Shown here: positions 7,484 through 17,772 of the stretch, piece by piece
Position numbering within the stretch: the first letter of the stretch is position 1
Layout: each line of letters begins with the position of its first letter
Assembly (NCBI GenBank): GCA_029953675.1
Contig: JAMWBK010000007.1
Coordinates: 1,116,001 to 1,180,000 of the forward strand
Length of the DNA: 64,000 nt
Source of the DNA: Rhodosorus marinus CCMP1338
Lineage: Eukaryota > Plantae > Rhodophyta
Direction of reading: 5' to 3'
Notes under the pieces: model-generated
Database searches by the model: none
What the model was told of the DNA's origin: nothing
Seen by the model: the letters and a program-made list of their open reading frames with translations, nothing else
Made by a program: the position numbers and the translations under genes

Positions 7484-8099
7484 ATGGCTTTTGTTGGAAG
7501 TAGTTCTGCTGTTGTTGGTAGAGGAGTGGGTAGGAGCGATGTAGTAATGTGCGGGAGAGGGCGGCAGGGTGTGGTGATGTCGCTTTCGAGAAGGGATATC
7601 ATCTCACTTGGTGCTCTGGCGGCTTTGGTGCCTTCTTTTGCGTTTGCGGAGGAGGGGGGTATTGCGCCTGCGACGAAAGCTGCGCCGACCAAGGTTTCTG
7701 GAAATTATGCTGATGGTATGGTTTGGATCAAGTTTTGGGGTAGAGGTTTGGGCTTACCGTACTAACTTTAGCGTTACTTTTGCTGTTTTTATCTGGGCCA
7801 CAGATGCGAAGAACGTGTTGGACAATATGATAAACGTGTGCAGCTTTAAGAAGGGAACTCCGGGGATGAGCGACGTCGTTGCTGATGTGAGAAAGGAAAT
7901 GAACGACTTTGTAGCACGGTATCGACGAAACAACAATGTCAACGGATCGGCATCGTTCAACACCCTCTATACCGCGATAAACACGCTCAGCGGTCACTAC
8001 GCGTCTTATGGAAACAACTACCCGGTCCCCGAGAAGCGCAAGAAGAGACTGACACAGCAGTTTGCAGAAATCGACAAAGCCCTGAAGCGGGGTCGCTAG
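7484..8099 (+). CDS. psb27: Photosystem II assembly/repair protein Psb27, nuclear-encoded (2 exons)
   Basis: MAFV transit peptide and an SRR..AFA lumenal (Tat-type) signal. Intron 7716-7803 has a TACTAAC branch point. Mature domain contains MNDFVARYRR..SFNTLYTAINTLSGHYASYGNNYPVPEKRKKRL. Confidence 0.93.
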
Positions 8100-8601: not shown

Positions 8602-11600
8602 TCAGTTGTGAGCCAGCGGTGGTGGTGGTGGTGGAGGCATAGGTGCCGCCGAAGTTGTCGGGCTTGCAGGGACGAACGCTGGCGGCGGAGGAGGTGGCGC
8701 CATTGTCGCCAAAGTTGTCGGGCTCGCGGGGACGAGCGCTGGCGGCGAAGGAGGTGGCGCCATTGTCGATGTTGTCTTCAAAGATGGCGGAGGTGGCGGT
8801 GGCGCAAGAAACTCGACTCGTGGCGACATCCTCAGAGGTGGTGGCGGCGGCGGCGCAAGAAACTCAACAACCTTTGGCGGTGATGATATCGTTGGCGGCG
8901 GCGGCGGCGGCGGCGCAAGAAATTCAACAACCTTTGGCGATGATAATATCGTTGAGGGTGGTGGCCGCGGCGACAAGGCCGGGGGCGGTGGTGGGCGAAT
9001 CTTTACCGATGTGACTGTGGTACATTCTCCTCCCATCTCACTCTCGCCGTTAGGGATTTCTTCGTGGTCGTTGGGTACAGATTGATTGCTCGCCTGTCCA
9101 TCTCCCAGCGCATCTCCGTTTCCGGCATCAGTACATTTGCTCCCGTGAGAAAGGGCAAAACTCGGAGTTGAGCTGACCTTCGACATTGACTTCTCCTCGT
9201 AGAAGATCCACTCATCCCCAACCGACCGCAGGGATTCACTCAGCCTACGGTCATCACGTACTTTTCTAAATTGAGTAACGAATTGGTCCAGAGCTACAAA
9301 AATTTCCACAACCGTGCTCGCTTTGTTACACGCGGGAAGGTAATGCAAGATTCCATCCGCGCATTCATTCATCGCGTTAATCGATTCTCGTAATTCTTCC
9401 CGAGCAGGTTCTGCCTCCTCCAGCCAATCAGCCATCTCCGCAGCAAACGCAAGTCCGCCGCTTTCATTTCTGCACTGCTGAACCTCGGCTTCCGCATCAC
9501 AAACAGATTTCAAAACCTGGTCACCCCGCGCTACGATCGCTTTGTGGTCCAGGGTCGCGGCATCCCTCAGGCTTGGTATCTCCGAGTCGAACTCGAGAAT
9601 CCCCGGCATCTTCTTGCGCAAGACGGCAACCGCGTAATCAAGAAGTGTGAAACGTCCCATACTTGCCCTCGTGTTCACCATGGTAGGCAGGTTTAGGATC
9701 GAAAACCCGCGCGCGTTTCCCTTTGCTGTACCCGCGTTCATTGTATTGCCCAAGGCCAGCGCGAACTCTAGAAGGCAATGGAACTTATTCGCCTCGGCAA
9801 GTTCTTGACAGGCCCGCCTCACTAGGCTTGAATCTGCGACGGTGGACGTAACCGAATTTTGAAAGTGGAACGACAGGCACATTGCCTCAGCCTTTCGTGG
9901 CAGTCTTTGCACCATGGCAAATCGCACGAACAATTGCTCCGCCACATGCAGACCATCGATGCTTGCAAGGTCGAAACTCTCCCTCCCAATCGTGTCAAGC
10001 TCATCCTCCGTCGGCAAAATCGGGAGGAGTAGCGTAAGTGACTCTTCGTCGAACATCTCCCGATTCGCGGTGTTGAGCCCATTAACCAACTCCTCCAAGC
10101 TCATGCGTCGGAACTTCGCGAGGACTATTTCCACGTTTCGAGCTCTCTTGGAATCGAGATACCGCAAGGTAGACGACGGTTCCGTTTCGTTCGAGAATCC
10201 CGGCTCGTTCTTCCCTGGTGTAACTCCGAAGTAACGTACGAGCTCGTTCTTATCCGGGAACCACGAGCCGGCGACAATCCATTCCCACAAGGATCCTTTG
10301 ATGGACTTGGGCGGGACCTTGTTCCAATGGAATCTCTTTGTTGGGAGACTTTCTGATCGAGCAAATTCATCGTCAAGGTTCTGCACTACTGAGTTGGAGC
10401 CATACATAGACCCTGGAGTTCGGAGTTGATCTGTCCCATCCTTCGCCATACCACCGGCCCCTGGTGTCCTAGATCTCCCTAATTGTCGTTTGGCAGCTTC
10501 AGCCTTTTTCTTCTCGACCGCCTTGAGAGTCAGTTCGCTGGTATCCCGCAAATTCTTGATCTTTTTCGACAATGCGGGACTCAACCCCTCAACGTTTGAG
10601 AGCATATCCAGCGCCTCCGTTATAGAGTCGGCACTAGCGCCGTCCTGTTGAAGCAAACCCTGAATTGCTGAAAGCAGCGAAACCGCCTTGTTGTGGCTAG
10701 AGGTCTCCTCTTCCAGTCTTGAGGTGCGAAGCTCGACCATGTCCCTCTCCAGCTCACGGCATCTCTCCTCGCTTGCTATGAGAGCATTCTCTAGCATCCT
10801 AACATTAGCTTCCTGCGCAGCAACGGCATCCAAAGCTTCCTTCAGGTTTGCTCGAGCCTGATTTTCGCCCTTTACGCCCACGTTCAGCTCCTTCACGTTT
10901 TCGTATGCCTCCCAATCCTCCCCCCAGTTCGCCGTTCGAATTTCGGCGTTACAGTACCAGAGATCCATCTGCTCTTCACGTGACATACCCTCGTACTCCG
11001 GGCCAATCGACAGGACCTTGTAGTCGAAGGCTTGCTCAATTGTTGAGGACCGGAATGTGACAACGATGTCCCAGACATTTCCTGGGTTCCAGTTCATGCG
11101 CCGGGCACAGACCGGGTCCCAGCCGCCAATCTCGTCAGGCTCACCCAGAATGTAGAGGTTCTGCCCATACGCCAGGTTTTGCGGGATTCTCAGGCGGGCC
11201 GGTTCATACCGGTCGTCAAAGTCTGACCTACCCAAGAAGACGTCGCTTGTGTGCAGCACTGCCTTTCTGTTGAACCTATTTTCCCATCGAATAGAAATAT
11301 TCGGATCGAATTGTCCGTCGTTTGCTTGGGCAAAATATCTATATTCAAAGTTGGATTCCCTGCTCGCTGCCGCGCCAAAGTCCACGGTGATATCCCACTG
11401 GTAATCCCCTGCCAAATCATCCAGTGAATGGACCAAAGGCAGGGCCCTCTCCACGTTCCATTCTCCCAACTCGGGTACGGATCCAATAATATAAACTCTC
11501 TCGCCAAACCTCGTTCCAAAATTTACACTGAACCGCAGAGTGATAACTCTATTGTTCTCGTCCGGAGTAATCACCACCTGGTTTGCATCCTCCGATGATG

Positions 11601-11670
11601 ATGTCAGCCCACTTGTCTCGTCATCAGAATCCTCCATAGTTGCAAACTCCCAAGAATTGTCCTCCGACAT
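8602..11670 (-). CDS. Formin (FH2) with two N-terminal CBM20 starch-binding domains, a coiled coil and a C-terminal poly-proline region; single exon, about 1022 aa
   Basis: First ATG is at 11670 (MSEDN). CBM20-1: LRFSVNFGTRFGERVYIIGSVPELGEWN..QWDITV..FEYRY..IRWE. CBM20-2: LAYGQNLYILGEPDEIGGWD..GNVWDIVV..FDYKV. FH2: FHWNKV..SLWE, LDSKRARNVEIVL, LLPILPTEDE, LALGNTMNAG..ARGF. About 7 poly-Pro tracts follow FH2. Confidence 0.9.
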   Translation of the reverse strand: MSEDNSWEFATMEDSDDETSGLTSSSEDANQVVITPDENNRVITLRFSVNFGTRFGERVYIIGSVPELGEWNVERALPLVHSLDDLAGDYQWDITVDFGAAASRESNFEYRYFAQANDGQFDPNISIRWENRFNRKAVLHTSDVFLGRSDFDDRYEPARLRIPQNLAYGQNLYILGEPDEIGGWDPVCARRMNWNPGNVWDIVVTFRSSTIEQAFDYKVLSIGPEYEGMSREEQMDLWYCNAEIRTANWGEDWEAYENVKELNVGVKGENQARANLKEALDAVAAQEANVRMLENALIASEERCRELERDMVELRTSRLEEETSSHNKAVSLLSAIQGLLQQDGASADSITEALDMLSNVEGLSPALSKKIKNLRDTSELTLKAVEKKKAEAAKRQLGRSRTPGAGGMAKDGTDQLRTPGSMYGSNSVVQNLDDEFARSESLPTKRFHWNKVPPKSIKGSLWEWIVAGSWFPDKNELVRYFGVTPGKNEPGFSNETEPSSTLRYLDSKRARNVEIVLAKFRRMSLEELVNGLNTANREMFDEESLTLLLPILPTEDELDTIGRESFDLASIDGLHVAEQLFVRFAMVQRLPRKAEAMCLSFHFQNSVTSTVADSSLVRRACQELAEANKFHCLLEFALALGNTMNAGTAKGNARGFSILNLPTMVNTRASMGRFTLLDYAVAVLRKKMPGILEFDSEIPSLRDAATLDHKAIVARGDQVLKSVCDAEAEVQQCRNESGGLAFAAEMADWLEEAEPAREELRESINAMNECADGILHYLPACNKASTVVEIFVALDQFVTQFRKVRDDRRLSESLRSVGDEWIFYEEKSMSKVSSTPSFALSHGSKCTDAGNGDALGDGQASNQSVPNDHEEIPNGESEMGGECTTVTSVKIRPPPPPALSPRPPPSTILSSPKVVEFLAPPPPPPPTISSPPKVVEFLAPPPPPPLRMSPRVEFLAPPPPPPSLKTTSTMAPPPSPPALVPASPTTLATMAPPPPPPAFVPASPTTSAAPMPPPPPPPLAHN
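8610..9000 (-). repeat. Coding tandem repeats in the formin Pro-rich tail: (K/R)(V)VEFLAPPPPPP x3 and (T/P)MAPPP..A(L/F)VPASPT-type units
   Basis: Near-identical DNA blocks on the + strand, e.g. ggcggcggcgcaagaaa(c/t)tc three times and gaggtggcgccattgtc twice. Confidence 0.85.
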
Positions 11671-14856: not shown

Positions 14857-17772
14857 ATGGAACCGGTGGCATTTGTGGGTGATGTTTGCGGTTTGCGTCA
14901 AAGGGGTCGGAAGATATTGATATGTGCGGAGGATAAGGAGAATTTTATTATAGAGCGGGCGAAGAAGGATCTGGAGGTGACGCAGGAGTTTTTTCGGACT
15001 GCGTTTCAAGCGGATGGGGCGCCGGTGGTGTTGAAGAGTAATACTGCAAAATCTGCTGCGAAGAAGATCAGGAAAGGCTTGGAGGAGGTTGAGAAGGCTT
15101 CTATTCGAGGTGCAAACAGTTTGCAACTTGCTGCTGGCGTTGTTCTTACTCTGTTCTCCGGGATTGTCGGAGGAGCGAAGACACTTGGTACGACAATTAG
15201 GAAAGAACTAAGGCTTGAAGCTGTTGAAGACATCGAAGAAGCGGAACAGGATGATTCCACGGATTCCAACTCCATTACGAAAAAGACTGAAGGAGGAAAA
15301 GTCAAAACTAGACGACGGCCCACTCGCGGTAAGACTTCAGAACGAATGATTATGGGTTCGTTCCGATGGCAGGTCGTACCTGAAGATGTGAAAAGGCAGC
15401 TAGGCTCTGAAGACTTCATACAGCTGCTCAATAGGCAAAGACAAGAGTACAAGATTACCATGAAAACGAGTATCTCAAGCGCGAAAAAGGGCATGCATTC
15501 TCGGGTTACCGAACATTTGCTAAGAGCCGCCAAAAATGATTCCGGAAACAAGACCGCTGCCTTCCCAGCAGGTATGCATGCGTGGGACACTACTACTTCC
15601 CTGCGTCCAGGAGACTGCTGAGGCCGAATCTTTTTCTGGAAAATCTCTCTTAGGATCGCAGGAGTTAGAACGAAGCAAGCCATCGTCTTCACCTAAGGAA
15701 GGGACGAAGCGGAGAAGAGGCGGACCAGAAGGTAATTTTCAAGATCCAAGACGAGGACGACCAATGGTTGGCTCAGGTACAATACTGATACGAATTCCGA
15801 TCGTGACGGCTCTTGCGAACCCGTGATAGGTACTCGGAAGGGCGATGGAATCAACGTCAACGACGTCGTCAAATCAGTCCAGAGTTCTTGGACGGTACTT
15901 GAACGGCAGTCGAAGGACTTGCCGGCTCCGGCCAAAACATTCTTCACCAAAGTGGTCTCTGAAGTCCTGTTGAACAACAAGTCGCCTCCCAGCGACCGAA
16001 AGACAAGGTCGAGAATTGGTAGCGCAGAGGGTTCTATCTCGGAAACCCAGTCCAATACTAAACCCGACCCCCAACTGCGACAAGATGGGGGAAAAGCAAT
16101 GGAATTGAGTTCCGGACCTGAGATGCTGACTCTCCTCGCTTCTGGGGCGTTCTTTGTTGTTACTGCCAATGGCCATGATCTCACGAGTGTCATGGCCGCC
16201 AGCACCGCCTCTATTGGAACTGCAATGGCTGTCATGCGAGCACAGGGTTCCAGAGTCCTACCCTTGCACATGACTACACTTGGTGCAAGTCGGAAAAGTT
16301 CAGCACTGAAGAATTCTGTCTTTAGGAAGAAAGCGTCGGAGGCAACGAGCCCAGTCCAAGCGTATCCAGAGGTAAAGAAGATGGCACCGAAGAAATTGAG
16401 ACCAGTTCAGGCGGATTCCGTGGTTGAGGAGATCGAATCCAAGACATCGAGCCCAGTTCAAGTGGATCCCGTTATTAAGAAGTTGGCATCCAAGACAACG
16501 AGCCCAGTCCAAGCGGATCCAGTGATTAAGGAGACCGCGTCCAAGGCGTCGAGACCAGTTCCAGCAGATCCGGTGGTTGAGGAGATCGAATCCAAGACAT
16601 CGAGACCAGTTCAGGCAGATCCGGTGGTTGGGGAGATCGAATCCAAGACATCGAGCCCAGTTCAAGTGGACCCCGTTATTAAGAAGATGGCATCCAAGAC
16701 AACGATCCCAGCCGAAGCGGATCCAGTGATTAAGGAGACCGCGTCCAAGACATCGAGACCAGTTCAGGCAGATCCGGTGGTTGAGGAGATCGAATCCAAG
16801 AGATCGAGCCCAGTTCAAGTGGATCCCGTTATTAAGAAGGTGGCATCCAAGACAACGAGCCCAGCCGAAGCGGATCCAGTGATTAAGGAGACCGCGTCGA
16901 AGGCATCGAGACCAGTTCAAGCAGACCCCGTGGTTAAGAAGCCCGAATCCAAGACATCGAGACCAGTTCAGGCGGATCCGGTAGTTGAGGAGCTCGAATC
17001 CAAGACATCGAGCACAGTTCAAGTGGATCCAGCGGTTGAGAAGAGGGCATCGACGAAGTCGAGACCAGCTCAAGCGGCTCCGGTGGCTAAGAAGACGTCG
17101 AAGACATCGAGCCCAGTTCAAGCGGACCCCGTGGTTGAGGAGATCGAATCCAAGACATCGAGCCCAGTTCAAGCGGACCCCGTGGTTGAGGAGATCGAAT
17201 CCAAGACATCGAGCCCAATTCAAGTGGATCCCGTTGTTAAGAAGTTGACATCCAAGACCACGAGCCCAGTCCAAGCGGGTCCAGTGATTAAGGAGACCGC
17301 GTCCAAGCTATCGAGCCCAGTTCAAGCGGATCCAGTACTGACAGAGCCCAACAAAAACTCAAAGGCTATTCCACTAGTGCCCCGGGAGGATGGTGGGAAA
17401 CTGCAGAAGGGCCTCTTCACCGTGGAAAACTTATTCTCTACTGCAGGTGAACGAAGCGAGACTAAAACTCAAGGCGTGGCTTCCGGAGATCTAGTGGTGA
17501 TTGCTGAGGATATTGGTGATGAAGCCAATGCGAATAATAGTATTATCATTGACGCAAATGCGTTTACAGTACCGATAGAATTGACTGACTTGTCGCCACC
17601 GGTGCACCTGGCTCTACTGGCGATCCTGGACGAGGGCCTGTACACTGCTGAGGTCGTGCTTAGCCGTGCCAAGTCACGAATTCTCCGATCCGGATTTGGG
17701 ATCGATGTGGCAGATGATGTGGAGATGTTGTCCACTTTCCGGCAACACTATGAGGAAAATGACCTCTTGTAA
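14857..17772 (+). CDS. Uncharacterised protein of about 900 aa with a probable plastid transit peptide and a 17-aa tandem-repeat region (3 exons predicted)
   Basis: Starts MEPVAFVG. Predicted phase-1 introns 15572-15668 (GTATGC..TTAG) and 15732-15829 (GTAATT..ATAG) join the 254-aa and 649-aa ORFs in frame. No known domain was recognised. Confidence 0.65.
16335..17350 (+). repeat. Coding minisatellite, 51-bp / 17-aa unit (consensus SKTSSPVQADPVVEEIE), about 20 copies
   Basis: Counted from the translation. Unit ends cycle EEIE / KK(L,M,V)A / KETA, a higher-order 3-unit period. Confidence 0.92.

What the first reader, a model, noticed from the sequence alone, without database searches (positions are those of the whole stretch)
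8602..11670. Starch-binding formin: two CBM20 domains fused to an FH2 actin nucleator
Seen: a single 3-kb open frame carries two CBM20-like modules (LGEWN, FEYRY, IRWE; IGGWD, FDYKV), a coiled coil and a complete FH2. FH2 keeps the lasso Trps, the actin-binding Ile in NVEIVL and the GNTMN motif; the DTK Lys appears as Arg in NTR. There is no transit or signal peptide. Established: CBM20 binds starch and glycogen, FH2 dimers nucleate and elongate actin, and red algae store floridean starch in the cytosol rather than the plastid. Inference: the protein could anchor or nucleate actin on cytosolic starch granules to position or partition them. I know of no described formin with this architecture.
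Basis: partly seen in the sequence, partly recalled or inferred. Interest (0 to 1): 0.88.

Follow-up and report, generated by a model that had tools for sequence, protein, structure and literature searches.

The report
Starch-binding formin of red algae
A red alga (Rhodosorus marinus) has one intron-free gene that joins two starch-binding modules to an actin-filament-building formin domain, with the proline-rich part placed after that domain rather than before it; relatives in Porphyridium and Bangiopsis share the design, and no paper found describes it.

Summary
Window 8602-11670 (minus strand) is one uninterrupted 1022-codon gene of Rhodosorus marinus (GCA_029953675.1, contig JAMWBK010000007.1), already called there as a single product. 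Pfam finds a complete FH2 (E 2.6e-66). Each CBM20 module passes the curated cut-off alone (58.5 and 33.4 bits against 23.3).

The same architecture occurs in transcripts of another R. marinus strain, Bangiopsis and Porphyridium aerugineum, in the P. purpureum genome, and on two environmental or unidentified contigs. The CBM20 pair is the best-conserved part of the protein. Its canonical glucan-binding Trp/Lys/Asn residues are invariant or conservatively replaced.

This holds in all seven orthologues and in the nearest FH2-only formins of Cyanidiophyceae.

The most likely function is a cytosolic formin tethered to floridean starch granules that assembles actin there. That is inference; nothing was assayed. 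No paper in the searched library links CBM20 with a formin, but the proteins already sit in public databases with automatic names. I rate it a new variant of a known kind, of moderately high interest.

The parts
8602..11670 (-). Complete intron-free coding sequence, 1022 aa plus the stop codon at 8602-8604
   Evidence: ORF listing. The same 1022-aa product is called in GCA_029953675.1. It is colinear with the transcript-derived R. marinus protein P0002 at 87-92% identity.
11551..11670 (-). Acidic N-terminal segment (aa 1-40), not a signal or transit peptide
   Evidence: 12 Asp/Glu and 0 Lys/Arg, with an in-frame stop upstream. Poorly conserved between species.
11251..11541 (-). CBM20 module 1 (aa ~44-140)
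   Evidence: Pfam CBM_20, 58.5 bits, E 6e-16 when scanned alone. Aligns to the glucoamylase SBD 1ac0 at E 4e-7. W71, W92, W129 and N134 are invariant and R/K111 is conserved.
11197..11250 (-). Conserved inter-module linker (aa 141-158, HTSDVFLGRSDFDDRYEP)
   Evidence: 88-100% identical among the four Stylonematophyceae-type sequences and 22-27% to the three Porphyridium-type sequences.
10867..11196 (-). CBM20 module 2 (aa 159-268), with an inserted helix of about 20 aa
   Evidence: Pfam CBM_20, 33.4 bits, E 3.9e-8 when scanned alone. The AlphaFold N-terminal model shows a second beta-sandwich. W184, W194, W200, K218 and W249 are invariant.
10471..10866 (-). Helical, probably coiled-coil region (aa 269-400)
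   Evidence: Long helices predicted at 269-341 and 365-397 in a low-confidence model. Weak match to the ELKS coiled coil. The heptad test was inconclusive. Only 11-27% identity to the five more distant orthologues.
10348..10470 (-). Poorly conserved spacer predicted disordered (aa 401-441), with no proline tracts
   Evidence: pLDDT below 50. Proline fraction 0.03 in the 100 aa before FH2.
9268..10347 (-). Complete FH2 domain (aa 442-801)
   Evidence: Pfam FH2, 224.7 bits, profile positions 9-371 of 372. mDia1, DAAM1, FMNL3 and INF2 FH2 structures match at E 1e-25 to 1e-17. I515, the GNxMN motif and the lasso Trp residues are invariant.
8617..8994 (-). C-terminal polyproline (FH1-like) region (aa 893-1018) with six runs of 5-7 prolines
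   Evidence: Proline-run map. Partly built from two 60-bp tandem arrays at 8647-8768 and 8843-8972. Its position after FH2 is conserved in all 7 orthologues.

Best explanation
This is a real, single, cytosolic formin gene of the red alga Rhodosorus marinus. Its N-terminal regulatory or targeting region is a tandem pair of CBM20 starch-binding modules. Shown: the domain composition, its conservation in at least two red-algal classes, and purifying selection on the glucan-contact residues. Inferred: the two CBM20 modules (four per dimer) fix the protein to the surface of cytosolic floridean starch granules or to nascent alpha-glucan. The helical region and the FH2 lasso/post contacts make a dimer. 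The FH2 dimer nucleates actin filaments and rides on their barbed ends. The C-terminal polyproline tracts recruit profilin-actin, feeding the FH2 from the C-terminal side rather than the usual N-terminal side. The net effect would be actin assembled directly on the storage granule, used to hold, space or partition granules. That would be a cargo-anchored nucleator, working like CHUP1 on chloroplasts.
For: The domain calls are well above threshold, and the predicted fold of the N-terminus matches solved CBM20 domains of glucoamylase, laforin and GPCPD1. It is one ORF in two genomes and one transcript in R. marinus MMETSP0011, Bangiopsis CCMP1999 and Porphyridium aerugineum. The CBM20 pair is the most conserved part of the protein: 59-65% identity against 47-49% for FH2, and 37-45% against 30-33% in the Porphyridium-type sequences. 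The residues equivalent to glucoamylase W543, W563, K578, W590 and N595 are invariant or changed only K/R in both modules. The FH2 is complete, with the actin-binding Ile invariant. The N-terminus is acidic with no targeting peptide, and red algae keep their starch in the cytoplasm (PMC6492006). At least one red alga lacks myosin and Arp2/3 subunits but has profilin and formins, which makes formins the plausible main nucleators (PMC7503314). An organelle-anchored, profilin-dependent nucleator has a precedent in CHUP1 (bioRxiv 10.1101/2020.01.14.905984).
Against: Nothing was tested biochemically or in cells. Some CBM20 domains in non-enzymes have no proven glucan role. In module 1, site 2 is incomplete: there is no equivalent of Y556, and the Y527 equivalent is F, I or H. 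The second conserved actin-contact residue (the Lys of DTK) is Arg here and Met or Leu in the Porphyridium-type orthologues. A polyproline region after FH2 has no demonstrated ability to deliver profilin-actin. The presence of profilin in R. marinus was not checked. The full-length model is of low confidence.
Confidence: 0.5

Rival explanations
1. The CBM20 pair acts as a carbon-status sensor. It folds back on FH2 or the C-terminus and holds the formin inactive. Binding of soluble or granular alpha-glucan releases it, so actin dynamics follow carbohydrate supply. The CBM20 pair would then replace the GBD/DID-DAD switch of diaphanous-type formins rather than serve as an anchor.
For: No GBD, FH3 or DAD domain is found. 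The CBM20 pair and its linker are very strongly conserved, more than FH2, as expected for a module with several partners. CBM-type glucan sensing is established for the AMPK beta subunit (own knowledge).
Against: There is no evidence of an intramolecular contact, and the full-length model is too poor to show one. Tandem CBM20 modules with both sites kept are typical of avid binding to insoluble granules (own knowledge).
Confidence: 0.2
2. The protein is mainly a starch-granule scaffold. In plant PTST-type proteins a glucan-binding module plus a coiled coil organises granule initiation or enzyme recruitment. On this reading FH2 only links the granule passively to existing actin filaments by side or end binding, without nucleation.
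For: The N-terminal half, CBM modules plus a long helical region, has the same logic as CBM48-coiled-coil PTST proteins (own knowledge). A paralogue, P0013, keeps the CBM20 pair and helical region but has lost FH2, so the N-terminal half may be useful by itself. The Lys-equivalent actin contact is not conserved.
Against: FH2 is complete, with the catalytic Ile, the lasso Trp residues and GNxMN invariant. Polyproline tracts have been maintained and expanded by tandem duplication, which suggests profilin-dependent elongation.
Confidence: 0.12
3. The CBM20-like modules no longer bind glucan. They serve as protein-interaction domains or bind another ligand, so the link to starch is only historical.
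For: Module 2 has an inserted helix of about 20 aa and matches only positions 11-69 of the 97-position Pfam profile. Module 1 lacks one site-2 aromatic residue.
Against: All site-1 residues in both modules and all three site-2 aromatic residues in module 2 are invariant, or changed only Y/F or K/R, across orthologues that share only 29-30% overall identity with the window protein.
Confidence: 0.1
4. The fusion is an artefact: two neighbouring genes were read through or mis-assembled.
For: None found. The only hint is that a paralogue exists as a CBM20-only gene.
Against: There is no stop codon in 3066 bases. The same colinear protein comes from independent transcriptomes of three taxa and from two other genomic contigs.
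Confidence: 0.02

Closest known systems
Formins (FH2 proteins), e.g. mDia1, DAAM1, Bni1
   Same: A complete FH2 with the lasso Trp residues, the knob Ile (I515, aligned to the mDia1 Ile in NLSIFL) and the GNxMN post motif, plus polyproline tracts in the same protein.
   Different: There is no GBD/FH3/DAD, PTEN or transmembrane region. The N-terminus is a CBM20 pair. The polyproline tracts lie after FH2, not before it. The DTK lysine is Arg here and Met or Leu in the Porphyridium-type orthologues.
FH2-only formins of Cyanidiophyceae (Galdieria sulphuraria XP_005703173.1, Cyanidium caldarium KAK4536569.1, Galdieria phlegrea)
   Same: These are the nearest FH2 relatives outside the family (E about 1e-56 to 1e-59). 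Their single polyproline run also sits after FH2.
   Different: They have no CBM20 and carry only one proline run, where the window protein has six.
CBM20 in non-hydrolytic proteins: laforin, STBD1/genethonin-1, GPCPD1
   Same: A CBM20 is used as a targeting module on a cytosolic, non-amylolytic protein. Laforin (4rkk) and the GPCPD1 CBM20 (2z0b) are among the structural matches.
   Different: Those proteins carry one CBM20 joined to a phosphatase, an autophagy adaptor or a phosphodiesterase. None is joined to a cytoskeletal nucleator, and none has this tandem with a conserved linker.
CHUP1 (plant chloroplast-anchored actin nucleator)
   Same: The proposed logic is the same: an anchor on the cargo and a profilin-dependent nucleating domain. 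CHUP1 also has a coiled coil and a proline-rich region (own knowledge).
   Different: CHUP1 is not homologous. Its C-terminal domain only resembles FH2 in fold, and its anchor is a membrane segment on the chloroplast envelope, not a glucan-binding module.
PTST-type proteins of plant plastids (CBM48 plus coiled coil)
   Same: A glucan-binding module followed by a coiled coil, as in the N-terminal half here and in the FH2-less paralogue P0013 (own knowledge for PTST).
   Different: A different CBM family, a plastid location, and no actin-related domain.

Membership tests
Formin (Pfam PF02181 FH2) | Full-length FH2 match above the curated threshold | tested here: met
   224.7 bits against a cut-off of 34.8, profile positions 9-371 of 372. 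Solved FH2 structures match at E down to 2e-25.
Formin (Pfam PF02181 FH2) | Actin-binding Ile of the knob (Bni1 I1431 / mDia1 I845) | tested here: met
   I515 in NVEIVL aligns with the Ile of mDia1 NLSIFL and is invariant in 7 orthologues.
Formin (Pfam PF02181 FH2) | Conserved Lys of the DTK motif (Bni1 K1601 / mDia1 K994) | tested here: inconclusive
   It is Arg (R668, NTR) here and in the Stylonematophyceae-type sequences, and Met or Leu in the three Porphyridium-type orthologues.
Formin (Pfam PF02181 FH2) | Dimerisation elements: lasso Trp residues and GNxMN post motif | tested here: met
   W449, W462, W470 and G641-N642-x-M/L-N645 are conserved in all 7 sequences.
Formin (Pfam PF02181 FH2) | FH1 (polyproline) immediately N-terminal to FH2 (the canonical order, as stated in PMC2386819) | tested here: not met
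   There are no runs of 4 or more prolines before FH2, and the proline fraction there is 0.03. Six runs lie after FH2. The same holds in all orthologues.
Formin (Pfam PF02181 FH2) | Nucleates or elongates actin filaments | not testable with these tools
   Needs pyrene-actin or TIRF assays.
Diaphanous-related formins | GBD/FH3 (DID) at the N-terminus and DAD at the C-terminus | tested here: not met
   No Drf_GBD, Drf_FH3 or Drf_DAD hit at E up to 1.
CBM20 (Pfam PF00686, CAZy CBM20) | Domain match above the curated threshold for each module | tested here: met
   Module 1 scores 58.5 bits and module 2 scores 33.4 bits, against a cut-off of 23.3.
CBM20 (Pfam PF00686, CAZy CBM20) | Beta-sandwich fold like solved CBM20 domains | tested here: met
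   AlphaFold model with mean pLDDT 69 and two beta-sandwiches. The Foldseek top matches are the glucoamylase SBDs 6fhv, 2vn4 and 1kul (E 1e-4 to 5e-4, TM 0.69 relative to 1kul), laforin and GPCPD1. Model confidence is only moderate.
CBM20 (Pfam PF00686, CAZy CBM20) | Binding site 1 residues (A. niger glucoamylase W543, K578, W590, N595) | tested here: met
   Module 1 has W71, R111 (K in the Porphyridium-type sequences), W129 and N134. Module 2 has W184 and K218 invariant. The W590 equivalent is either W249 (invariant) or W253 (6 of 7), and the exact mapping is unresolved.
CBM20 (Pfam PF00686, CAZy CBM20) | Binding site 2 residues (Y527, Y556, W563) | tested here: inconclusive
   Module 2 is complete, with Y/F168, W194 and W200. 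Module 1 is partial: F55 is variable, there is no Y556 equivalent, and W92 is invariant.
CBM20 (Pfam PF00686, CAZy CBM20) | Binds starch, glycogen or cyclodextrin | not testable with these tools
   Needs a pull-down or ITC with the recombinant N-terminus.

The most novel reading that the evidence does not exclude
Some red algae position or partition their cytosolic starch granules with a dedicated formin. It sits on the granule through four CBM20 modules per dimer and polymerises actin from the granule surface. It does so with a reversed FH2-then-FH1 layout, which would show that profilin-actin can be delivered to FH2 from its C-terminal side. That would be both a new class of cargo-anchored nucleator and a natural experiment on the formin elongation mechanism.
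Probability: 0.35. Interest if true: 0.8.

Novelty: new variant of a known kind. Interest (0 to 1): 0.62.

Why it matters
How insoluble storage granules in the cytosol are spaced, held and shared between daughter cells is poorly understood, for floridean starch and for glycogen alike. A direct, genetically encoded link between an alpha-glucan-binding module and an actin nucleator offers a concrete handle. It can be tested in Porphyridium purpureum, which I recall is transformable and which has an orthologue.

The conserved placement of the polyproline tracts after FH2 also challenges the textbook FH1-FH2 order. It offers a natural test of whether the geometry of FH1 delivery matters.

Finally, the CBM20 pair could serve as a probe or tether for cytosolic starch.

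Tried and rejected
- **Word-index homologue searches.** The searches with the N-terminus alone and with a 7-sequence profile returned almost nothing. They missed even sequences that were in the query, so I did not use them to judge distribution. I relied on the exhaustive HMMER search instead.
- **Other CBM20+FH2 proteins.** I looked among the 20 multi-stretch or long-stretch hits in the top 150. None has CBM_20. They carry PTEN_C2, GBD/FH3, RhoGAP or repeated FH2.
- **Full-length AlphaFold model.** Mean pLDDT was 48.6, too poor for domain-packing or autoinhibition arguments, so I did not use it for fold search.
- **Crude heptad periodicity test.** The coiled-coil region was not distinguishable from shuffled sequence.
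- **Truncated paralogue P0013.** I considered that it might be a split gene model of this gene. I rejected that because it lies on another contig, is only 48% identical, and has just 480 bp before the next gene.
- **Haplotig explanation for the duplicated block.** Rejected, because the shared Psb27 genes are only 78% identical in DNA.
- **Literature searches.** Searches on CBM20 with formin, starch-binding domain with formins, FH2-FH1, formin with Porphyridium, and floridean starch with actin found no description of this architecture.
Full report
**What is there**

On the minus strand of the window an open frame runs without a stop from 11697 to 8602. An in-frame stop lies 13 codons upstream. 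An exact-sequence look-up places the window in Rhodosorus marinus assembly GCA_029953675.1, contig JAMWBK010000007.1. There the same 1022-aa product is already called as one gene carrying Pfam CBM_20 and FH2. Rhodosorus belongs to the Stylonematales, and red algae keep their floridean starch in the cytoplasm (PMC6492006).

**Domain check**

- Pfam gives FH2 at E 2.6e-66, covering 9-371 of 372 profile positions, and CBM_20 at E 3.3e-23 in two stretches.
- Scanned separately, module 1 scores 58.5 bits and module 2 scores 33.4 bits, both above the curated 23.3-bit cut-off.
- Against solved structures by sequence, the FH2 matches mDia1, DAAM1, FMNL3 and INF2 (E 2e-25 to 6e-17). The N-terminus matches the Aspergillus niger glucoamylase starch-binding domain (E 7e-6 for the whole protein, 4e-7 for module 1 alone).
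- An AlphaFold model of residues 35-272 (mean pLDDT 69) shows two beta-sandwiches. Its best structural matches are the glucoamylase starch-binding domains 6fhv, 2vn4 and 1kul (TM 0.69 relative to 1kul), followed by laforin and the GPCPD1 CBM20.

**One gene, not two**

The fusion is seen independently several times:
- as a transcript-derived protein of another R. marinus strain (MMETSP0011, 87% identical, colinear);
- in Bangiopsis sp. CCMP1999 (transcript marked complete, 44-46%);
- in Porphyridium aerugineum (MMETSP0313);
- in the Porphyridium purpureum genome (KAA8499585.1, named 'Formin-like protein 13');
- on a JGI metagenome contig;
- as a single uninterrupted ORF on an 11-kb genomic contig from run SRR22824290.

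The neighbouring Psb27 gene in the window has an intron, so this genome does have introns. The formin simply has none.

**Distribution**

An exhaustive HMMER search of 1.84 billion representative proteins, using a four-sequence profile without the proline tail, found 7085 hits. Full-length matches over both halves came only from the red-algal sequences above, plus a few fragments from the same kind of organism. The next best hits are FH2-only formins of Cyanidiophyceae (Galdieria, Cyanidium, Cyanidiococcus), then plant and other formins. Twenty top hits with several matched stretches or unusually long matches were scanned, and none has CBM_20. The three formins reported for Neopyropia yezoensis are PTEN-type or FH2-only (PMC13606620).

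Two caveats apply. Only the best 150 hits could be inspected. The two word-index searches were clearly incomplete.

**Conservation argues for function**

In a seven-sequence alignment the two CBM20 modules are the best-conserved part of the protein.

| Region | vs the Bangiopsis and SRR22824290 sequences | vs the three Porphyridium-type sequences |
|---|---|---|
| CBM20 modules | 59-65% | 37-45% |
| FH2 | 47-49% | 30-33% |
| Helical region | 24-27% | 11-17% |

The residues aligned to the glucoamylase binding sites are fixed:
- **Module 1:** W71 (W543), W92 (W563), R/K111 (K578), W129 (W590), N134 (N595).
- **Module 2:** Y/F168 (Y527), W184 (W543), W194 (Y556), W200 (W563), K218 (K578) and W249.

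Module 1 lacks an equivalent of Y556, so its second site looks incomplete. Module 2 has an inserted helix, and it is not settled whether W249 or W253 plays the part of W590.

**FH2 details**

I515 in NVEIVL aligns with the essential Ile of mDia1 and is invariant. The lasso Trp residues and GNxMN are kept. No GBD, FH3, DAD, PTEN or transmembrane feature was found.

The last ~130 residues hold six runs of five to seven prolines, partly generated by two 60-bp tandem arrays. This is an FH1-like region, but it lies after FH2. The 100 residues before FH2 are only 3% proline.

The same holds in all seven orthologues. The nearest FH2-only formins of Cyanidiophyceae likewise have their single polyproline run at the extreme C-terminus. 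The canonical description puts FH1 on the N-terminal side of FH2 (PMC2386819). I found no paper describing the reverse order. This reversed order looks like a trait of a whole red-algal formin lineage, to which the CBM20 pair was added (or from which it was lost in Cyanidiophyceae).

**Mechanism**

*Shown:* domain composition, conservation, the absence of a targeting peptide (12 acidic and no basic residues in the first 40), and the red-algal source.

*Inferred:* the CBM20 pair tethers the dimer to cytosolic starch, FH2 nucleates and elongates actin there, and the C-terminal tracts bring profilin-actin.

Context that makes this reasonable:
- Cyanidioschyzon merolae lacks myosin and Arp2/3 subunits but has profilin and two formins (PMC7503314).
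- Plants move chloroplasts with CHUP1, an organelle-anchored, profilin-dependent nucleator.

Rival readings:
- a glucan-sensing autoinhibitory switch;
- a PTST-like granule scaffold in which FH2 only binds filaments;
- CBM20 modules that have lost glucan binding.

The artefact reading is excluded for practical purposes.

**Novelty**

No paper in the searched library joins CBM20 with a formin or starch granules with formins. The sequences themselves are public and automatically labelled as formin-like or CBM20-containing. This is therefore an undescribed architecture, not an unseen sequence. I class it as a new variant of a known kind.

**Side observation**

R. marinus has a second, older copy of the block [911-aa unknown gene - CBM20 gene - Psb27] on contig JAMWBK010000003.1. 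In that copy the formin paralogue (KAJ8906854.1, 400 aa, 48% identical) keeps both CBM20 modules and the helical region. It stops right after the first FH2 lasso residues, only 480 bp before Psb27.

Noticed in passing
L002 6001-7203 (R. marinus JAMWBK010000003.1); compare window 8602-11670: There is a truncated paralogue (KAJ8906854.1, 400 aa, 48% identical). It has both CBM20 modules and the helical region but ends just after the first FH2 lasso residues. It lies in a duplicated syntenic block next to a Psb27 paralogue. It could be a CBM20/coiled-coil partner or a decaying copy.
   Followed up: partly
window 7484-8099 (+) and L002 7684-8300: The neighbouring gene encodes a Psb27-family photosystem II protein (Pfam PSII_Pbs27, E 1e-26) with a plastid-type N-terminus and one intron. 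Its paralogue is 98% identical over the last 99 aa but only 78% identical in DNA, so the duplication is old and the protein is tightly constrained.
   Followed up: partly
P0161, P0019, P0020 (Galdieria sulphuraria, Cyanidium caldarium, Galdieria phlegrea formins): These FH2-only Cyanidiophyceae formins have their only polyproline run (9-11 Pro) after FH2 at the extreme C-terminus. The reversed FH2-then-polyproline order therefore seems general to this red-algal formin lineage.
   Followed up: partly
P0010 residues ~13-30 and P0012 residues ~120-140 (Porphyridium orthologues): The Porphyridium orthologues carry an extra N-terminal extension of 150-300 aa with a short Cys-rich motif (CxxC...CxxxC) that is absent from Rhodosorus and Bangiopsis. 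It may be a small zinc-binding element or a gene-model extension.
   Followed up: no
window 8647-8768 and 8843-8972: Two 60-bp (20-codon) tandem arrays, about 2 copies each at 88-91% identity, build part of the polyproline region. Copy number differs from the MMETSP0011 strain, so the tract number evolves quickly.
   Followed up: partly
window 14857-17772 (+): The upstream neighbour is a 911-aa predicted protein with no Pfam match. It has a paralogue (about 50% identity over the aligned part) in the duplicated block on contig 3.
   Followed up: no
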